A stretch of 63,727 bases of DNA, filler included, from Octopus bimaculoides (lineage: Eukaryota): NCBI RefSeq assembly GCF_001194135.2. It is 6 parts of 5 records of this genome, joined end to end, with 100 filler letters (N's around TTAATTAATTAA, not from the genome) between each part and the next. Parts side by side here need not be neighbours in the genome. Positions count along the whole stretch, not along the records: positions 51,913 to 62,238 come from NC_069004.1; 5 more parts are not named here. One strand, given 5' to 3'. Each line of letters starts with the position of its first letter. Position 1 is the first letter of the stretch. Positions 52,941 through 62,238 of this stretch are shown here, one piece after another. The notes below the pieces were generated by a model. It did not search any database, was not told the DNA's origin, and was given only the letters and a program-made list of their open reading frames with translations. The translations under genes were made by a program, and so were the position numbers.

Positions 52941-53569
52941 TTTCTTATTAGTAAATATTATAAGGAACTGTATGAAAAAAAATTGTTGAAATATTTTGTG
53001 TTGTAGAAGCACATTCAATTTAGGCGCATAAATTTTAAGGGCAAAATCTTATTTGGACCCCACTCTCATGGGTCGTTTGGACCTCAGCTGAGAACCACTG
53101 GACAATATATATAAAATATTTGATTACAATGGCGAAGTTTTAGCTTCTACGTGCAAGAGTCTTTGCTCAATTTCTCCTGGTGAAGACTTAATGAGATTCT
53201 CATACATGTTTTTTACCTTCCATACCAACAGTGAAAGCGCCAAAATGAACGCCGTGTGAAGCGTTCATTTTGTGAAAGCTCCAAAATGAACGCCGTGAAA
53301 GCGCCAAAAATGAACGTCTTATTCAAAGAAGTCATCTGCTGGTCTTCAACTAGTTTTCTACTAAACCTTGGCCAGGGTGTATAACTGGCCGAATGATGAG
53401 GATGGTAGTCTTTCGTAGTCCGAGAAAGGTGATTCTGCAATTTCTTGTTGAACAACCTTCACGAATGATTCATTTATCGTGATAAAAGGTTCTTCATTCC
53501 CTTCATCAAATTGGCGTTGCTTGTGCAGGTGCAATGATGTACCACTCGTCAGGTGTCGAAATGGTCACG

Positions 53570-53665
53570 GAACACAGTGAGGTGAAGTGTTTTGCTCAAG
53601 AACACAACGCACCACCAGGTCCAAGAACTGAAACACGATCTCGCGATCGCTTGGCCATGCACCCT
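53570..53665 (-). mobile_element. tRNA-derived SINE 5' fragment (35104-type)
   Basis: GAAGTGTTTTGCTCAAGAACACAACGC is the reverse complement of the shared middle module. Confidence 0.55.
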
Positions 53666-53689
53666 CAGCTGGCGAATCAATCCAAAAAG

Positions 53690-53850
53690 AACCTACCGGG
53701 GACAGCTTCCTCTCGGCCCATTGCCGAGCGAGAGTGACCACCCTACTCGTTATCTCGTTCCAGCTCTTCTCTGTTTGGAGGTCCGGACCAAACCAGACAC
53801 CGAGCAACTCGACCGGACCGTCGGTCCAGCGTCCCACGACGGAGGTCCTG
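53690..53850 (-). mobile_element. L1/Tx1-like LINE fragment (post-RT region)
   Basis: RWTDGPVELLGVWFGPDLQTEKSWNEITSRV..WAERKLS; abuts (GATA)n. Confidence 0.65.
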
Positions 53851-53852
53851 GT

Positions 53853-53895
<43 letters not shown>

Positions 53896-53930
53896 GTGTG
53901 GGCTTGAAAATGTGTGTGTATGTGTGTGTA

Positions 53931-54201
53931 TTCTTTTATTCTTTTGTCTCAGTCATTTGACTGCGGCCATGCTGGAGCACCACCTTTAGTCGAACAAATC
54001 GACCCCAGGACTTCTTCTTTGTAAGCCTAGTACTTATTCTATCGGTCGCTTTTGCCGAACCGCTAAGTTACGGGGATGTAAACACACCGATAGAATAAGT
54101 ACTAGGCTTGTAAAGAATAAGTCCTGGGGTCGATTTGCTCGACTAAAAGGCGGTGCCCCAGCATGGCCGCAGTCAAATGACTGAAACAAGTAAGAGAATA
54201 A

Positions 54202-54204
<3 letters not shown>
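53931..54204. repeat. Fold-back palindrome made of two inverted SINE D/A tails
   Basis: Arms 53949-54046 and 54086-54184 (6 mismatches + 1 indel by manual alignment); 39-nt loop. Confidence 0.9.
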
Positions 54205-54243
<39 letters not shown>

Positions 54244-54465
54244 GTAACTAATTGTTGCTTTTGTACGGAAAAAGTGACGGAAAGATAAGATGGTGGTGCA
54301 AGCGCGCGATTACTAGTTGTCCTCGGTGTTCTGGACGTCATCTGTCACTTCCATGCTTTCATTACAAAGCTGTAACAGGTTGCCGAGATGATGGCTCGAC
54401 GACTCGTAAGACTTCCTTTTCTTGAAAGTATGTTCTGAGTTATGCTAACCTATACTTCAGACAAA

Positions 54466-54496
<31 letters not shown>

Positions 54497-54577
54497 ATCA
54501 TTTGTACCACATACGCTGTGATACATTGTCACGCGTACACATGTGCGTATGTTCTGTTAAGATACACAAAGACAGAC

Positions 54578-54634
<57 letters not shown>

Positions 54635-54899
54635 CAGTTATATAGATAGATATTGACATATATATATATGAATGTTTTAATGTGTGTGTGTGCTTGTGTG
54701 TGCGTGTGTAAAGATAGCGAAATAGAAGAGGAGGGAGGAGAAAGAGCGAGACAATGCCAAAAGTGCACTTTTCACATCCGTACAGAAATAACGTGCCATC
54801 ACACACACACAGACACACACACAGGCACGCACGCACGAACAAACACGCACACATACAGAGGGACACGCGTGCGCAAGCGCAGAAGGGCGCGTGTACCAC

Positions 54900-55490
54900 T
54901 ACGTGGTCGGTCGACGTACTAGAAACAACAACCAAATTAACTGCAATCTCATCCTGTCGTCTTAAAAATTAAGAGGAAGGACATGTTAGAAAATGTAGTT
55001 TTAGATACATTTAAAGAGATGAGGAGGTGGTTATGGTTGGAGCGTCTTTAGTGATAGGTCTTTTCAATCAAGGTTGACCCGAAATTAACAGAAGAAAAAC
55101 AGACGCATACATACATTCATACATGCATGCATACATGCATACATGCATACATACATGAATGCATACATGCATGAATGCATGCATGCATGCATACATACGT
55201 ACGTACATACACACATGCATACATATACACACGTATACATGTACAGACATCAATACACAGACACATGCAGCTAACGGGAGGGCTCGTCTGTGTGGTCGTT
55301 AGGACCGGTTGCTAGAAATAACAACCGGATTTCTTTAATTCACACCTAGTCTTTTAAAAAATAATGTAGGAAAGGACATATTAGACTATATACTCCTAGA
55401 TAGCCTTGAAAAGATTGGATGGTAAAGGCTGGAATGTCTTTTGATCACAGGGTCGGCTCAATCCGGTTTGATCTGGGCCTAAACGACTAG
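54900..55490 (+). repeat. Two copies of repeat family F (54900-55090, 55275-55490) separated by microsatellite
   Basis: GTGGTCG....TAGAAA.AACAACC...GGAAGGACAT.TTAGA shared between the copies. Confidence 0.55.
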
Positions 55491-55979
55491 ACCGCACATA
55501 GATACACATATATACACATACATACACACACTCATAGAGACATACAGACATACCCGCACGCACACAAACACACATGGACTATACACCATAACACGTAACT
55601 GCATACACATACACATACGCGAAGCATAACAAACACAGAAACACCGCCGTCGGTGTTATTATTGTTGATGTTATTGTTGATGTTACTTAAAACAAAGGCA
55701 GCCAATCGTGGCCATCAAGAATTTTTCCTAGATGCAAGGGAAATCCTGGAACACAACATTTAACGTGTCCTTCTAAAACAAACACATACACACACACGCA
55801 CGCACACACACAGACGCGCACACACATACTCAGAGAAAAGTGTTAGGGTGTGGTTTGATGTTTGTCTGCTATTTCTAGCAGACGATAGAACCACGTAGAG
55901 ACATGTGCTGGTGACTCTCAACACAAACACCGTTACACAACAACGATTTCGTGTACCACACTCCGTTATATGCACTAAT

Positions 55980-56049
<70 letters not shown>

Positions 56050-56908
56050 NNNNNNNNNNNNNNNNNNNNNNNNNNNNNNNNNNNNNNNNNNNNNNNNNNN
56101 NNNNNNNNNNNNNNNNNNNNNNNNNNNNNNNNNNNNNNNNNNNNNNNNNNNNNNNNNNNNNNNNNNNNNNNNNNNNNNNNNNNNNNNNNNNNNNNNNNNN
56201 NNNNNNNNNNNNNNNNNNNNNNNNNNNNNNNNNNNNNNNNNNNNNNNNNNNNNNNNNNNNNNNNNNNNNNNNNNNNNNNNNNNNNNNNNNNNNNNNNNNN
56301 NNNNNNNNNNNNNNNNNNNNNNNNNNNNNNNNNNNNNNNNNNNNNNNNNNNNNNNNNNNNNNNNNNNNNNNNNNNNNNNNNNNNNNNNNNNNNNNNNNNN
56401 NNNNNNNNNNNNNNNNNNNNNNNNNNNNNNNNNNNNNNNNNNNNNNNNNNNNNNNNNNNNNNNNNNNNNNNNNNNNNNNNNNNNNNNNNNNNNNNNNNNN
56501 NNNNNNNNNNNNNNNNNNNNNNNNNNNNNNNNNNNNNNNNNNNNNNNNNNNNNNNNNNNNNNNNNNNNNNNNNNNNNNNNNNNNNNNNNNNNNNNNNNNN
56601 NNNNNNNNNNNNNNNNNNNNNNNNNNNNNNNNNNNNNNNNNNNNNNNNNNNNNNNNNNNNNNNNNNNNNNNNNNNNNNNNNNNNNNNNNNNNNNNNNNNN
56701 NNNNNNNNNNNNNNNNNNNNNNNNNNNNNNNNNNNNNNNNNNNNNNNNNNNNNNNNNNNNNNNNNNNNNNNNNNNNNNNNNNNNNNNNNNNNNNNNNNNN
56801 NNNNNNNNNNNNNNNNNNNNNNNNNNNNNNNNNNNNNNNNNNNNNNNNNNNNNNNNNNNNNNNNNNNNNNNNNNNNNNNNNNNNNNNNNNNNNNNNNNNN
56901 NNNNNNNC

Positions 56909-57032
56909 CGAATCCAGTCACAAGGCTTTGGTCAGCCCGGGATAATAGCTGAAAACACTTACCCCAAGATACCGCGCAGTGGGACTGAACCCGGAACCAT
57001 GTGATTGAGAAGCAAACTTCTTAACACGCCCC
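56909..57032 (-). mobile_element. SINE D head
   Basis: CACAAGGCTTTGGTCAGCCCG...CAGTGGGACTGAACCCGGAACCATGTG. Confidence 0.75.
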
Positions 57033-57037
57033 ACCAC

Positions 57038-57084
<47 letters not shown>

Positions 57085-57134
57085 TACGGCATAATATACT
57101 ACACACATACACACACACTAGTAAATTATCGAGC

Positions 57135-57330
57135 GTCCAAATGGTCGCATGACTCTGCTAGAAATAGCAACCAAATCTTCCTCAAATCTGCATATTTACT
57201 GTCTCAGAAAGGAAAGACAAATTGGTGAATGTGATCCTAGGTTATACTACAACTTTAAAAGGAGAGGATGGATGGTCGTTGTTGGCACGCCTTTGTTTAT
57301 AGATTTGCTCAAAGTTGACCAAATAAATAA
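57135..57330 (+). repeat. Repeat family F
   Basis: TGGTCGCATGACTCTGCTAGAAATAGCAACCAAATC. Confidence 0.5.
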
Positions 57331-58208
57331 ACCACTATAAACAACCTCTCTCACACACACAGGCGCACACAAAACAAACGGATCCTGTAAGTGGTCACTC
57401 AACCTATAAGACATAACAACAGTCAAATCTCTATCTATCTGTTTATCTATCGACTTCTGTCAGTGGTCTCACCCACTTTTTTCCAAGGGACCTCTGTGAG
57501 TCCTGTTTTACACAGCGAGGGACCCTCATATATCCATTCCCTGCTTTAAAAAAATCCTATTTTTTGTAATTAAATATTATTAGAAATTGTGTTTATAAAA
57601 ACTGTTAAAATATGTTGTTTATTGCATAAATTTTTACAGCAAAATCTTTTATGGTCACACCAGGAGGACCACTGGCCTAATTAGAAATACGCTGTATGAA
57701 TGTCATAACTGGAACGCCCGTCTTCGATAGTAAGGGCTCGCTCGAACGCAACTGACCTTGGGTTAAATAAATATAACGACCCGTTGAAAGTGGACGTTAT
57801 CGACACGGTTCGTAGCATAAACACACACACACGCACACACACATACACACATATATACACATAGATACATACACACATACCATACACGCACACACATGCA
57901 CCCAAATACATAACACACATCACCAGACAACATAACAGTGACACGCGCCATAGCATAAACACACACACACACATACATACACACACACTCACAACACATA
58001 CATACATATATACATACATACGTACGTACGTACGTACGTACATACACCGACATGCACCGTAACTTACACAGAAATACATATAAACACACGTATATAAACA
58101 CAAACACATCCACACACACACACACACACACAGCCAGACACCGACAGGTGCCGTAACATATACATTAATAGATACAAATACAACCATATCCACACACACA
58201 TACATACA

Positions 58209-58239
<31 letters not shown>

Positions 58240-58269
58240 TATATACACACACACACACATCATAAACAC

Positions 58270-58420
58270 ACTTTCAACCAATCCATGCTGCGCTTTCCAG
58301 GAATGTTTTCAGCTTTTCCCAGTCGCTTCCTATCTGTACCTCCCCTCGTAGCCGAATGGAATCGTCCGCCTATATATATCAGCCTCGCTTTGGCCGTACC
58401 ACTTTAGTTGCTGATTGGAA
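58270..58420 (+). promoter_or_regulatory. Candidate core promoter upstream of the LRAT-domain exon
   Basis: Non-repetitive, GC-richer stretch with CCAAT (about 58277), TATATATA (58371) and Inr-like TTAGTT (A at 58406); motif matching only. Confidence 0.25.
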
Positions 58421-59195
58421 GCTATGCTGTGCGTACCGTAACGCTTGCATTTTATTCGCTCTGCACTTCCACCTTGCGCTTATTATTATTATTAATAATA
58501 ATTGTTATTATTATTATTATTATAAAACTCATGCCGCCTTCTTCTAAAAACAAAATTTGCTTACATTTAACGCCAATGCCATCATTAATTTCTATGATGG
58601 TGATAAATTTTTCCCTTTCACAGTGATTCATAAACCCGCCAAGGAAACTAACTGGATTATTGTTTTGTAATTTTTCCAATTCCCTGTTGGATCTTATTTG
58701 TATCTCTTCATTTTCAATGTTTCGTCCAAGGAGAAACACACTTTGTCATTCGCCTATAACATCTTGTCCAGGACAGTATCTTAATTACAACCTTACAACG
58801 TTAATTGTATAACAAACACCTCATTGCATATCATTAACCAGACATACATACAAATATCTGATATCTCATTTTCACCGTGTTGTGATTATTGATATTTCCC
58901 AAACACACACATATATATATATATATATATTCACCATTCAGTCAAAAAAATCCTCTTTGACATAAATTGTATGTAATAAATATATAATATACACATACAT
59001 TATCACCAGCCATCAAATCACCATACATATATAACATATATATATATATATATACATACATAGTTGTATGTGTATTTATATTATACAATAATATTATTTA
59101 TATTATTATATGATATCAAGCTGACCATTTGATATCGTCTGTTATTCCAGTTGTTATTTCTTATTTTGCGATATTATAAAACAAACGGATTTTCA

Positions 59196-59807
59196 ATGAA
59201 GCCCATCACGTTCTTGGAGAAAATTGAAGAAAAAACTAACAAACTAACCACAACAACACCTGCAACAATAACGAAAACAAACAATCACAATAACAACAAC
59301 AACAACAATAATCACAATATTAACAGCAAACATATAATAATGAAGGAAGAACTACCACGGAATCGGGTTCGAGTGCCAAGCGGGTGCCCATCGCCGAGCA
59401 GCCCCAGCGGGATGTTGACCGGGTTGCGAAGCTTCTGTCGGCCGTCCGACCTGGAAGATGTGGAGCTGGGGGATCTAATTGAGATCGATCGCACAATCTA
59501 CACGCACTGGGGCCTATATGTGGGAGACGGCGAGATTGTGCACGTGTCGGGACCGAAATCGGAAATTTCTTCATCGGAATCGTTCGTCCGGCGCAGTTAC
59601 TTACAGGAGGTGGCCGGTGATTGTTTGGTTCGGATTAACAACAAAGAGGTGCCGGCCAAAGAGCGCGGCCTGGAACCGTTACCTTTAGAAGAAATACTCT
59701 CCAAGAGTTTGATCTCTGTCGGACAGTCTGTACCCTATAATTTCTTAACCAGAAATGTTGAACACTATGTAACAGAATGGCGATACGGTGTTGGCTGGAG
59801 TGACCAG
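59196..59807 (+). CDS. PLAAT-like: PLAAT/HRASLS-family (LRAT domain, NlpC/P60 superfamily) protein, partial; exon 59151-59807; catalytic Cys replaced by Val
   Basis: GDLIEIDRTIYTHWGLYVGDGEIVHV (H-box), VRINNK, YNFLTRNVEHYVTEWRYGVGWSDQ; no stops or frameshifts; acceptor TTCCAG at 59150, phase-0 donor CAG/GTGAGT at 59808; start may be ATG 59196 or 59340; downstream exon(s) not found. Confidence 0.9.
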
Positions 59808-60358
59808 GTGAGTTTTAATCTTTGAACTCCTTAAACTTCGCCCTGATCCCACCCTAACTTATATATATTGTTTATTTATTTTTTTTTACCCGTGTTCCCC
59901 AAACCCATTTTCAGTTATTTCATTTTGTCGTTTTTTATTGTTAGTGTTATTTCTTATCTCTTTTTAATGGATTACACCGTCATTCTTCGATAGACTTGAA
60001 GTTTCGAAACACTAGAATCCTTTCAGAGAAACAAACGCAGGCGGCCGAGAATTTCCTACTGGCACTGCACATTACCTATGTGTGTGTGTGTGTGTATACT
60101 TATATATGTAGGTATGTCTATGTATGTATATATATATATGTATATATATGTAATATATAATATATATATGTAATATATACATATATATATGTGTGTGTAT
60201 ATTATATATATGTGTATTATATATATGTGTATATATATATAGGCATTGTATATATACACACGCACACACACACACCTGCACATGACATACGTTTGTATAC
60301 ACACACACTCACACACCCAGACACACACTCATACACCACAGACACATACACTCACACA

Positions 60359-60390
<32 letters not shown>

Positions 60391-61003
60391 TACACACACA
60401 CATTATACTAATGAAAACATCCTGTTAGTTGTCTTTAGTTCCTTCGTTTTTTTCAAGTCTCTTCTTCCTGTCTTTCAAACAAACGGGATTTACGGTTTTA
60501 AGACATTTTTTCCTTTTTTTTAATCTACATTTCCCCTTCAAAACAAAATTGTGTGTGTGGATACACACCCACACCCAACCAGTTCCCCGTCTTAATCTTT
60601 TCCTCATGAGATTAGTTAATAGCTCCACCACGGTATATTAATATTAAAATGAATTGATTGTTGTGTTGTTAGAAGGAAAACATTTAATTAATTATAAATG
60701 AAACCAATCAGTCAGTCAATCGATCGATCACTGAGATTTTTATCCAGTTCCCTGTTCTCTGTTCAAAAAATATAGATATATACCGAAGGAAAATTCCCAT
60801 CTCTTCTCCTTCCCCCTCTCTCTTTCCTTTCCATCTCTAACATTCTATCTCCATTCCTTTCTCTCTTTTTCACACACTTGTTCACCCACTCTCTCACTCA
60901 CTCTCTCTCTGTTTTTACCTTTTCTACCTTCCTCTTTCGTTTTTTCGCTTTGCCCTCTCCCATCCACTCTCTCTCTCCCTCTCTCTCTCTCCCCCTCTCC
61001 CCC

Positions 61004-61037
<34 letters not shown>

Positions 61038-61956
61038 CACTTTTTCTCTCTCCTTTTTTACCTGTTTATCTATATTTCTCTCTATCTTTTCTATCTGGAT
61101 GTATATCTTATAGCCACGTCTATCTACATCTCTCTGTGTATATCTCTCTCTGTGTATATCTCTCTCTCTATATCTCTCTCTCTATTTATATCTACATCTC
61201 ATTTTCCTTATCTACACCTATCTGTCTACTTGCATATCAACTCAGCCTNNNNNNNNNNNNNNNNNNNNNNNNNNNNNNNNNNNNNNNNNNNNNNNNNNNN
61301 NNNNNNNNNNNNNNNNNNNNNNNNNNNNNNNNNNNNNNNNNNNNNNNNNNNNNNNNNNNNNNNNNNNNNNNNNNNNNNNNNNNNNNNNNNNNNNNNNNNN
61401 NNNNNNNNNNNNNNNNNNNNNNNNNNNNNNNNNNNNNNNNNNNNNNNNNNNNNNNNNNNNNNACACATATATATATAAAATGAATAAATACTATTTATAT
61501 AATTATATATATATGTAATTATATATATAGAAATAATTATGTATATACATATAATTATATATATAATTATTTATATATATATATAAATAACTATGTGTGT
61601 GTGTGTGTGTGTGTGAATATATATACCTCTGTGTTTATAAATATATATATGTGTGTGTGCTGGTGTAATCAATCTACTTGTATTTATATTTTTGCATCAC
61701 CACTGAACTAATTCTTGCTCAGCCTTTCTCTCAGAATTTCTCCCCCAACTCCCACCCATCCACCCACCCACCTCACTCTCTCATTCTTTTATATAACATC
61801 CGTAGTTGCACACTGACGACCACCAGCCAAACACCCCCCCATACACCCACACGCGCACAAACACAAGAATTGTGCTGCAATGTTGGTAAATAGTTGCTTT
61901 AGTGATGCTGCACACCTTGCTACATAATTGCTGCTACCGCCGCCACCACCACCACC

Positions 61957-62008
<52 letters not shown>

Positions 62009-62193
62009 TTACTAAACTATCTATGGCTATGTCTCTGAATGTTACCATTCTTTTCTATAAAATTGTGCGTAGGTATGTGTGTGCTTCAAATCTTTTTATA
62101 TATGTGTGTGTGTATGTGAGTGTATACAAATATAAATTATATACATACATCTTTTACCTTTACGCTTGTTTCAATCATTAGCCATGCTGGGGC

Positions 62194-62238
<45 letters not shown>

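What the first reader, a model, noticed from the sequence alone, without database searches (positions are those of the whole stretch)
59505..59768. PLAAT/HRASLS-family protein whose catalytic cysteine is replaced by valine (NVEHY)
The family uses a Cys-His-His triad, with the nucleophile in NCEHF. Both histidines are present here (CAC 59505, CAC 59541), but the nucleophile codon is GTT (Val, 59757-59759), two substitutions from TGT. The frame is intact, the splice sites are canonical and the surrounding motifs are well conserved, which argues for a maintained pseudoenzyme rather than a pseudogene. Vertebrate LRATD1/2 (FAM84A/B) also lack this Cys, so this may be an independent cephalopod or molluscan inactivation. 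A lipid-binding, scaffolding or dominant-negative role toward active PLAATs is possible. A-to-I editing cannot turn GUU into a Cys codon.
Basis: partly seen in the sequence, partly recalled or inferred. Interest (0 to 1): 0.7.

Follow-up and report, generated by a model that had tools for sequence, protein, structure and literature searches.

The report
Conserved cysteine-less PLAAT-like pseudoenzyme gene
This is the expressed, strongly conserved first exon of a cephalopod relative of the PLAAT lipid enzymes in which valine replaces the catalytic cysteine. It belongs to an undescribed invertebrate subfamily that has lost its catalytic residues many times while keeping the rest of the protein almost unchanged.

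Summary
Window 59340-59808 (+) is the coding part of a first exon encoding an LRAT/PLAAT-fold domain (Pfam E=2e-24). Both triad histidines are present (59505, 59541), and GTT Val (59757-59759) sits where PLAAT2/3/4 have the nucleophile Cys.

GTT is present in contigs of four DNA runs and four RNA runs. The RNA is spliced at 59808|GTGAGT to an exon outside the piece. Five other cephalopod sequences, including Acanthosepion pharaonis, also have Val (GTT or GTA). dN/dS among them is 0.01-0.03, so this is neither a pseudogene nor an assembly error.

It is not an LRATD/FAM84 orthologue (20.8 bits against an LRATD profile, 115.9 against a PLAAT profile). It belongs to a distinct protostome subfamily found in molluscs, chelicerates, tardigrades and a nemertean. 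The subfamily has a conserved KEVPAKERGL loop and a GWSDQ motif and lacks a C-terminal membrane anchor.

Only 17 of 98 members keep His-His-Cys. The nucleophile site is S, C, A, V, G, T, Y, F or N, with roughly 8-16 changes between Cys and non-Cys on bootstrapped trees. Its neighbours are invariant.

Best reading: a maintained non-catalytic binding protein. The function is untested. Whether Cys was lost in cephalopods or earlier in molluscs is unresolved.

The parts
59025..59808 (+). Transcribed first exon (5' UTR plus coding part). The 5' limit is approximate.
   Evidence: RNA contigs of X7, X6, X3 and X5 begin at 59025, 59091, 59119 and 59158. All end at 59808 with 0 mismatches, then continue about 200 nt off the piece.
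59340..59808 (+). Coding part of exon 1: Met1 to Gln156 plus the first base (G) of the split Ala codon.
   Evidence: Reading of the sequence. The MKEE start is conserved in orthologues, which have in-frame stops upstream. RNA joins 59808 to CCAACATAGCG..., reading ...SDQ|ANIALQTMSM as in orthologue P0003.
59457..59807 (+). LRAT / PLAAT-like (permuted NlpC/P60) domain, residues 40-156.
   Evidence: Pfam PF04970 E=2.2e-24 over residues 40-151. PDB PLAAT2/3/4 E about 1e-20. AF2 pLDDT above 90 over the domain, with Foldseek TM 0.85-0.90 to 4dpz, 7zom and 4fa0.
59505..59507 (+). CAC, His56, equivalent to PLAAT H23 (triad base).
   Evidence: Alignment to PLAAT3/4. CAT or CAC in all cephalopod orthologues.
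59541..59543 (+). CAC, His68, equivalent to PLAAT H35.
   Evidence: Alignment to PLAAT3/4. Conserved in cephalopod orthologues.
59757..59759 (+). GTT, Val140, in place of the nucleophile Cys (PLAAT C113).
   Evidence: Aligns with the C of NCEHF. First residue of helix 140-149. GTT in four DNA and four RNA runs. GTT or GTA in five other cephalopod loci.
59643..59672 (+). Subfamily-specific loop K-E-V-P-A-K-E-R-G-L (residues 102-111), about 4 residues longer than in PLAAT1-5.
   Evidence: Across 98 subfamily members K102 is 93%, A106 99%, R109 95% and L111 83% conserved. Vertebrate PLAATs have NNKHDDKY here. Predicted as a short helix, 103-108.
59809..59814 (+). Splice donor GTGAGT (phase-1 intron). 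Exon 2 lies beyond the piece.
   Evidence: All four RNA contigs leave the genome at 59808. The exon-2 sequence is absent from the window, and tblastn with orthologue tails finds nothing.
59196..59198 (+). Upstream in-frame ATG inside the transcript. It could add a 48-residue N/T-rich extension. It is probably not the conserved start.
   Evidence: The ORF is open from 59151. Transcripts cover it. Orthologues lack it.

Best explanation
The exon encodes the whole catalytic-type domain of a PLAAT-like (LRAT-fold, permuted NlpC/P60) protein that cannot carry out PLAAT chemistry. PLAAT/LRAT enzymes work through an acyl-thioester on the nucleophile Cys, and here that residue is Val.

The gene is transcribed, spliced and under very strong purifying selection. 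The protein therefore does something that does not need the nucleophile. It belongs to a protostome subfamily in which the triad residues are replaceable, mostly by small residues, while the surrounding cleft residues (N139, E141, H142, T145), the KEVPAKERGL loop, GWSDQ and two C-terminal helices are conserved, and there is no membrane anchor.

Most likely it is a soluble or peripheral non-catalytic binding or adaptor module. It would use the preserved former active-site cleft and the basic subfamily loop to hold a ligand, either a lipid or acyl group or a partner protein.

Shown: fold, Val at the nucleophile site, correctness of the sequence, expression, splicing, selection, and family-wide triad decay.
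Inferred: absence of acyl-transfer or phospholipase activity, and a binding function.
For: - Val aligns with the catalytic Cys and starts the nucleophile helix in a confident model that superposes on PLAAT2/3.
- GTT is in four DNA and four RNA runs. The only variant seen is synonymous (59624 T>C).
- Spliced mRNA reads ...SDQ|ANIALQTMSM.
- Omega is 0.01-0.03 among orthologues at dS 0.1-1.4. Against the window species dS is saturated and dN in the domain is 0.07-0.09. The Val codon varies synonymously, GTT/GTA.
- In the subfamily (98 members, domain score 130-180 bits against 116 or less for all other LRAT proteins) only 17 keep H-H-C. The nucleophile site is S37, C25, A18, V8, G4, T3, Y1, N1, F1, with entropy 2.3 bits, next to invariant E141 and 95% N139.
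- Outside the subfamily 51 of 60 single-domain proteins are H-H-C.
- Bootstrapped NJ trees built without the triad columns give 8-16 Cys/non-Cys changes.
- PLAAT3 C113S is used as a catalytically inactive mutant that still reaches damaged organelles (PMC12017856). FAM84B keeps H23 and H35 but not C113, and the review states without showing an assay that it lacks PLA/AT activity (PMC7140883).
- There is no TM segment in subfamily tails. The full-length orthologue model has two C-terminal helices.
Against: - No biochemical data exist for any member of this subfamily, so inactivity is inferred from the mechanism of the vertebrate enzymes.
- Both histidines and the neighbouring N, E and H are retained in cephalopods. 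That could equally reflect structural constraint or some residual chemistry.
- No ligand or partner is known.
- I could not inspect model coordinates, so clustering of conserved residues around the cleft is not demonstrated.
- The subfamily threshold was set with an HMM built from the subfamily itself. New representative-library sequences fall in the same upper mode, which lessens the circularity but does not remove it.
Confidence: 0.78

Rival explanations
1. The protein is still an enzyme. It would use another nucleophile, such as Cys95 in G-D-C-L-V or a Ser, or a His-activated water, so the Val substitution changes the mechanism rather than abolishing catalysis.
For: Both triad histidines, N139, E141 and H142 are retained in all cephalopod sequences. 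Cys95 is present in cephalopods and caenogastropods, all of which lack Cys140.
Against: No column shows a Cys that consistently compensates for loss of Cys140. Cys95 follows lineage and also occurs with Cys140 in two sequences. Other subfamily members lose the histidines as well (D/E/Q at His1; T/I/L/M/N/D/Y/V at His2) under equally strong conservation elsewhere. That argues the conserved function does not need the triad at all. Even the conservative PLAAT3 C113S change is treated as catalytically dead.
Confidence: 0.1
2. Loss of catalysis is itself the selected trait. A dead paralogue or orthologue would act as a dominant-negative or decoy, either against active PLAAT-type enzymes or against agents that exploit them. 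Vertebrate PLAAT3/PLA2G16 is a picornavirus host factor (my own knowledge, not checked here).
For: Cys was lost recurrently and independently in many lineages. A review proposes that FAM84B may oppose HRASLS action (PMC7140883).
Against: Omega of 0.01-0.03 shows no sign of an arms race. I could not establish that cephalopods have any Cys-bearing LRAT-domain paralogue to antagonise: none with a cephalopod label appeared. The subfamily lacks the membrane anchor that places PLAATs on their substrates.
Confidence: 0.08
3. The Val is an artefact or the gene is decaying: an assembly or sequencing error, or a young pseudogene.
For: None found. The piece is repeat-rich with three N gaps, which was the only reason to suspect the assembly.
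Against: Identical GTT in independent DNA and RNA runs from several studies. Open frame, correct splicing and expression. Val in five other cephalopod loci, with omega about 0.02.
Confidence: 0.01
4. It is the cephalopod orthologue of vertebrate LRATD1/2 (FAM84A/B), so the Cys loss is shared rather than independent.
For: LRATD proteins also keep both histidines and lack the Cys: NSE[SC]F in real LRATD sequences (PMC7140883). They also lack a TM anchor (my own knowledge).
Against: An LRATD profile scores the window protein 20.8 bits, over the N-terminal third only, while a PLAAT profile scores it 115.9 bits. LRATD proteins score 16-33 bits on the subfamily HMM and PLAATs 82-110 bits. No LRATD-named protein is among the best 120 profile hits. 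There is no Gly2 (the protein starts MKEE). Cys-bearing members occur within the subfamily.
Confidence: 0.03

Closest known systems
Vertebrate PLAAT1-5 (HRASLS / H-rev107 family phospholipase A and acyltransferases)
   Same: Same fold and domain order. Best sequence matches are at E about 1e-20 and 36-41% identity. Best structural matches have TM 0.85-0.90. Shared motifs are GDLIE, HW, VVH, VNNK, N-x-EH and RYG..SDQ, and both triad histidines are present.
   Different: The nucleophile Cys is replaced by Val. The loop after VNNK is 4 residues longer and conserved (KEVPAKERGL). The motif is GWSDQ rather than ARSDQ. There is no C-terminal transmembrane anchor; instead there are two conserved helices. 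A subfamily HMM separates the two groups, 130-180 bits against 82-110 bits.
LRATD1/LRATD2 (FAM84A/B), vertebrate LRAT-domain proteins without the catalytic Cys
   Same: An LRAT domain that keeps H23 and H35 but not C113 (PMC7140883; sequences). No TM anchor. Regarded as non-enzymatic.
   Different: They are not orthologous: 20.8 bits against 115.9 bits for PLAAT. LRATD has Ser at the site within NSE[SC]FAAWCR and a long N-terminal extension starting MGN. The cephalopod protein has Val and starts MKEE. The loss is independent.
PLAAT3 C113S laboratory mutant
   Same: A PLAAT fold without the nucleophile. It is described as catalytically inactive, yet it still relocates to damaged organelle membranes (PMC12017856). 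This shows the fold keeps targeting and binding behaviour without catalysis.
   Different: It is an engineered point mutant that retains the PLAAT3 C-terminal region. The natural cephalopod protein lacks such an anchor and has been shaped by long selection.
RipD (Rv1566c) of Mycobacterium tuberculosis, a non-catalytic NlpC/P60 domain protein
   Same: A naturally dead member of the same superfamily that retains a binding function, according to PDB titles 4lj1 and 4jxb seen.
   Different: It is a bacterial, non-permuted NlpC/P60 domain that binds peptidoglycan. The relationship is weak (Foldseek E about 1).
LRAT (lecithin:retinol acyltransferase)
   Same: Same Pfam family, PF04970.
   Different: LRAT keeps the Cys and has membrane-embedding segments. 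The only LRAT-containing PDB match is the HRASLS3/LRAT chimera 4q95, and it is weaker than the PLAAT matches.

Membership tests
LRAT domain family (Pfam PF04970; permuted NlpC/P60 fold) | Significant match to the family profile over the full domain | tested here: met
   E=2.2e-24, 86.5 bits (cutoff 24.3), profile positions 2-118 of 120.
LRAT domain family (Pfam PF04970; permuted NlpC/P60 fold) | Fold: a beta-sheet carrying the two His, followed by a helix whose first residue is the nucleophile | tested here: met
   AF2 pLDDT 86.8. Strands 55-62 and 65-70 carry His56 and His68, and helix 140-149 starts at residue 140. Foldseek TM 0.85-0.90 to PLAAT2/3.
PLAAT1-5 / HRASLS enzymes | Cys-His-His catalytic triad (H23, H35, C113) within NCEHF | tested here: not met
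   The His residues are present, but the Cys is replaced by Val (NVEHY). Confirmed in DNA and RNA.
PLAAT1-5 / HRASLS enzymes | C-terminal hydrophobic membrane anchor | tested here: not met
   Exon 2 is outside the piece, but its first 10 residues (ANIALQTMSM) match orthologue P0003. The P0003 tail has a maximum 19-residue Kyte-Doolittle mean of 0.94. All subfamily tails are at or below 1.02, against 1.8-2.5 in most vertebrate PLAATs. AF2 gives two soluble-type helices.
PLAAT1-5 / HRASLS enzymes | Phospholipase A1/2 and acyltransferase activity through an acyl-thioester | not testable with these tools
   Requires enzyme assays. Absence of activity is inferred from the missing thiol.
LRATD1/2 (FAM84A/B) | Closer sequence similarity to LRATD than to other LRAT-domain groups | tested here: not met
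   LRATD HMM 20.8 bits, PLAAT HMM 115.9 bits. LRATD sequences score 16-33 bits on the subfamily HMM.
LRATD1/2 (FAM84A/B) | N-terminal extension beginning Met-Gly (a myristoylation-type start) | tested here: not met
   LRATD full-length sequences start MGNQVEKL or MGNHMERL. The window protein and its orthologues start MKEE.
Protostome PLAAT-like subfamily defined here (VRVNNKEVPAKERGL ... N-x-EHYVTEWKYG-x-GWSDQ) | Domain score in the upper mode of the subfamily HMM, plus the extended loop and the GWSDQ motif | tested here: met
   177.9 bits. The distribution is bimodal with a gap at about 117-129 bits. Loop and motif are present. Caveat: the window sequence was in the HMM seed.
Protostome PLAAT-like subfamily defined here (VRVNNKEVPAKERGL ... 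N-x-EHYVTEWKYG-x-GWSDQ) | Conserved tail A-x-I/V-A/T-L-x-x-M ... H-x-x-L-x-x-x-L-x-x-x-L after GWSDQ | tested here: inconclusive
   Only the first 10 residues of exon 2 (ANIALQTMSM) could be read from the RNA loose ends, and they fit. The remainder is outside the piece.

The most novel reading that the evidence does not exclude
The conserved, ancestral job of this whole protostome PLAAT-like subfamily is non-catalytic. The LRAT fold would act as a ligand- or partner-binding module, and the Cys-His-His triad would be a dispensable relic that has been discarded about ten times independently, in cephalopods, gastropods, bivalves, spiders, ticks and several mite lineages. Even the Cys-bearing members would then act mainly as non-enzymes. 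The cephalopod Val form would be a natural 'catalysis-off' version of a still unknown conserved pathway component.
Probability: 0.3. Interest if true: 0.7.

Novelty: new variant of a known kind. Interest (0 to 1): 0.5.

Why it matters
Dead members of enzyme families are known, and LRATD1/2 and RipD are precedents in this superfamily. What is unusual here is the scale of the natural experiment. In one well-delimited subfamily spread across protostome phyla, 81 of 98 members lack an intact triad, yet omega among the cephalopod orthologues is about 0.02. Replacement residues are fixed within large clades: Val in cephalopods, Ser in spiders, Ala in mesostigmatid mites.

This makes a concrete question testable: what does a PLAAT fold do when it cannot make an acyl-enzyme? 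The material comes as ready-made pairs of Cys-bearing and Cys-less orthologues. It also warns that the database names seen for relatives of this protein ('phospholipase A and acyltransferase 3-like', 'HRAS-like suppressor 3') imply an enzymatic function that most subfamily members almost certainly lack.

Tried and rejected
- Exon 2 in the piece. tblastn with orthologue tails and an exact or 3-mismatch search for the RNA-derived exon-2 start found nothing. The intron is also longer than 10 kb in the cuttlefish locus.
- Source contig and species. That it is a cephalopod rests on 85-90% identity to Acanthosepion pharaonis and its unlabelled relatives.
- Orthologues in organisms B and C. Nothing was laid at 80% likeness or above.
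- Taxa of the Cys-bearing sister class with a CRVNNLE..A..GL loop. The listing of cluster members returned no organism names, so I could not test whether cephalopods own an active paralogue.
- Relocated nucleophile. No compensating Cys column was found.
- LRATD orthology: rejected.
- Pseudogene or assembly error: rejected.
- Literature. Searches on PLAAT with pseudoenzyme, on LRAT domain with invertebrates, and on PLAAT phylogeny found no description of this subfamily. One search failed on syntax.
- Rest of the piece. A Pfam scan of a retroelement-like ORF at 53565-53837 gave nothing.
- Codon paths. Val is two steps from Cys and from either type of Ser codon, so codons cannot tell a Cys ancestor from a Ser ancestor.

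Full report
**What is in the sequence.** On the + strand an open frame runs from ATG 59340 to 59808, where the sequence reads CAG G|GTGAGT. It encodes 156 residues. CAC 59505-59507 is His56 in T-H-W. CAC 59541-59543 is His68 in V-H-V. AAT GTT GAA CAC TAT places GTT (Val140) at 59757-59759.

Pfam assigns residues 40-151 to the LRAT family at E=2.2e-24. phmmer against PDB sequences finds PLAAT4, PLAAT3 and PLAAT2 at E=6e-21 to 9e-20. In those alignments the Val is in the column of the Cys in N-C-E-H-F and the two histidines are in the columns of H23 and H35.

An AlphaFold2 model built on a 90-sequence alignment is confident (mean pLDDT 86.8, above 90 across the domain). It puts Val140 as the first residue of helix 140-149, the place of the nucleophile in this fold.

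**Is the Val real, and is the gene alive?** The exon is held with all or nearly all sampled words in 20 public runs of one coded organism. Contigs of four DNA-type runs cover 59330-59830. They show no change at 59757-59759, and the only difference is a synonymous T>C at 59624 (TGT>TGC) in two runs.

Contigs of four RNA-type runs cover the exon with no differing letter. They begin unspliced at 59025-59158 and all leave the genome at 59808. They continue with CCAACATAGCGCTACAGACGATGTCCATGT, which completes the split codon and reads A-N-I-A-L-Q-T-M-S-M. That is the start of exon 2 of transcript-derived orthologues (P0003...GWSDQANIALQTMSMF).

So this is a first exon with a used GTGAGT donor (phase 1). 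Exon 2 is not in the piece. In the cuttlefish locus it is more than 10 kb away.

**Conservation in cephalopods.** The closest database proteins (85-90% identity) are four unlabelled clusters and one labelled Acanthosepion pharaonis. All read N-V-E-H-Y. I fetched their DNA and made a codon alignment.

- The nucleophile codon is GTT in four loci and GTA in two.
- Nei-Gojobori omega among these loci is 0.007-0.033 for exon 1 and 0.008-0.040 for the domain, at dS 0.09-1.45.
- Against the window species, synonymous sites are saturated while dN in the domain is only 0.07-0.09.

A pseudogene or neutrally drifting copy is excluded. Val itself has been held through a divergence deep enough to saturate silent sites.

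**The wider family.** A profile search with the first hits returned about 90 proteins scoring 160-270 bits, followed by a drop to vertebrate PLAATs at 100-130 bits. Labelled members come from these groups:

- Molluscs: Acanthosepion, Batillaria, Littorina, Babylonia, Gigantopelta, Patella, Lottia, Mytilus.
- Chelicerates: Limulus, Tachypleus, Centruroides, four spiders, three ticks, mesostigmatid, trombidiform, oribatid and astigmatid mites, and the sea spider Nymphon.
- Three tardigrades.
- The nemertean Tubulanus.

With a domain HMM built from them, domain scores over all 262 proteins collected are bimodal. Ninety-eight sequences score 130-180 bits and the rest score 116 or less. Sequences found independently by the exhaustive representative search also fall into the upper mode.

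The subfamily is marked by V-R-V-N-N-K-E-V-P-A-K-E-R-G-L, a loop four residues longer than in PLAAT1-5, and by N-x-E-H-Y-V-T-E-W-K-Y-G-x-G-W-S-D-Q. Its tails contain no segment hydrophobic enough for a membrane anchor: the maximum 19-residue Kyte-Doolittle mean is 1.02 or less, against 1.8-2.5 in most vertebrate PLAATs. AlphaFold2 of the full-length orthologue P0003 gives two C-terminal helices instead.

**Triad decay.** Within the 98 subfamily members:

- The nucleophile position is Ser 37, Cys 25, Ala 18, Val 8, Gly 4, Thr 3, and Tyr, Phe and Asn once each.
- The first His is replaced by D, E, Q or Y in 26 members.
- The second His is replaced by N, T, V, I, D, Y, L or M in 19 members.
- Only 17 keep His-His-Cys.

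Position 140 has 2.3 bits of entropy. It sits between N139 (95%) and invariant E141. D45, W57, R98, N100, N101, T145, W153 and S154 are invariant. Among single-domain LRAT proteins outside the subfamily, 51 of 60 are His-His-Cys.

Replacement residues are clade-specific: Val in cephalopods, Ser in spiders, Ala in mesostigmatid mites, Gly or Ser in ticks. Cys remains in horseshoe crabs, scorpion, sea spider, trombidiform mites, tardigrades and the nemertean. An oribatid mite has convergently acquired Val.

A neighbour-joining tree built without the three triad columns recovers these taxonomic groups. It needs 12 Cys/non-Cys changes by Fitch parsimony, and 60 bootstrap replicates give 8-16 with a median of 11. 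These numbers are rough, because the alignment is 112 columns, the method is NJ, and paralogy is uncontrolled. Several independent losses are nonetheless hard to avoid. For example, Cys, Val, Asn, Ser and Ala all occur inside the mite clade that shares the H-Y-L-T-E-W variant.

**Relation to LRATD.** I queried the database with my recollection of the human LRATD2 domain, solely to retrieve real sequences. It returned proteins labelled LRATD2, LRATD1 or FAM84A. [quoted passage not shown]

A profile of these LRATD sequences scores the window protein 20.8 bits, over its N-terminal third only. A vertebrate PLAAT profile scores it 115.9 bits. LRATD proteins score 16-33 bits on the subfamily HMM and PLAATs 82-110 bits. 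The cephalopod gene is thus PLAAT-like, not LRATD-like, and its Cys loss is independent of the vertebrate one.

Whether the loss happened in cephalopods or earlier in molluscs is open. Every labelled mollusc lacks Cys, but the residues differ (S, G, Y, F, V). The sister of the always-monophyletic cephalopod clade was Cys-bearing in 23 replicates, Cys-less in 23 and mixed in 14, out of 60. Codon paths do not help, since Val is two steps from Cys and from either class of Ser codon.

**How it most likely works.** PLAAT and LRAT enzymes act through an acyl-thioester on the nucleophile Cys (established mechanism; triad per PMC7140883). Even C113S in PLAAT3 is used as a catalytically inactive form, yet it still relocates to damaged organelles (PMC12017856). 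With Val the cephalopod protein cannot form the intermediate. No other Cys column compensates across the subfamily.

The conserved features are the cleft neighbours, the basic subfamily loop, GWSDQ and the C-terminal helices. The triad is freely replaced, mostly by small residues, which suggests a steric rather than chemical constraint at the helix N-terminus.

I therefore conclude that the protein is a maintained non-catalytic binding or adaptor module, soluble or peripheral. What it binds is unknown. The fold, the substitution, expression and selection are shown. Inactivity and a binding role are inferred. Residual or altered catalysis (about 0.1) and a selected decoy or dominant-negative role (about 0.08) remain possible. 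I could not determine whether cephalopods have any active LRAT-domain paralogue.

**Novelty and score.** I found no paper describing this subfamily or its triad decay. Database names for members ('phospholipase A and acyltransferase 3-like', 'HRAS-like suppressor 3') imply enzymes. Dead LRAT or NlpC/P60 domains are a known kind (LRATD1/2; RipD), so I rate this a new variant of a known kind. Interest is moderate (0.5): a single dead enzyme is ordinary, but a conserved family with about ten independent triad losses gives a clean handle on a non-catalytic function of the PLAAT fold.

Noticed in passing
window 59196-59339: An in-frame ATG lies 144 nt upstream of the conserved MKEE start, inside the transcribed region. 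It would add a 48-residue Asn/Thr-rich low-complexity extension. Orthologues have stops or no ATG there.
   Followed up: partly
window 59624: Synonymous T>C polymorphism (TGT>TGC, Cys95) in contigs of two of four DNA-type runs. It is the only variant seen in the exon.
   Followed up: yes
window 51913-62238: The piece is dominated by (TG/CA)n and (TA)n microsatellites, at least 13 tracts of 20-64 nt. It has three assembly gaps, at 52355-52364, 56050-56907 and 61249-61462. No other gene was found. Low-complexity RNA contigs pile up on the repeats and create spurious 'joints' in read laying.
   Followed up: partly
window 53565-53837 (-): A 90-residue ORF (…LLGVWFGPDLQTEKSWNEITSRV…) recalls, from memory, the C-terminal part of a non-LTR retrotransposon reverse transcriptase. 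It has no Pfam match at E<=1, so this is unverified.
   Followed up: partly
L010 6001-10844 (Acanthosepion pharaonis CAHIKZ030002212.1): The deposited gene model P0028 (286 aa) joins exon 1 to a low-complexity second exon (TKIFDFFPLSGVIFFF…). This disagrees with the transcript-supported exon 2 (ANIALQTMSMF…), and the real exon 2 is not within about 10 kb downstream. The model is probably mis-annotated.
   Followed up: partly
P0073 (Medioppia subpectinata) and P0148: Val at the nucleophile position arose convergently in an oribatid mite (triad H-D-V, motif NVECYLTEW) and in an unlabelled mite-like sequence (NVEHYLTEW).
   Followed up: partly
P0121-P0132 and others from the representative search: Some proteins have 3-11 tandem LRAT domains (for example P0121, 1125 aa, 11 matched stretches). 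Individual repeats have Ser, Ala or Asp in place of Cys. Their motifs (VNNLLDEKY … NCEHFA.EMRYGKAESRQ) resemble the fish protein P0090 (Solea). This is a different, PLAAT-type lineage with its own partial inactivation.
   Followed up: no
P0189, P0196, P0206, P0216, P0217, P0222, P0225 etc.: A further class has an extended loop (CRVNNLE.AA.K.GL) and NCEHF.T.CRYG.GFS.Q. It nearly always keeps the Cys and scores just below the subfamily (about 100-110 bits). It may be the active sister group, but no organism names could be obtained.
   Followed up: partly
P0041 (Pipistrellus nathusii, 284 aa): A bat 'unnamed protein product' scored 225 bits in the profile search and has NYEH (Tyr for Cys) in the domain that was aligned. 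Its length and score suggest two LRAT domains. It was not examined further.
   Followed up: no
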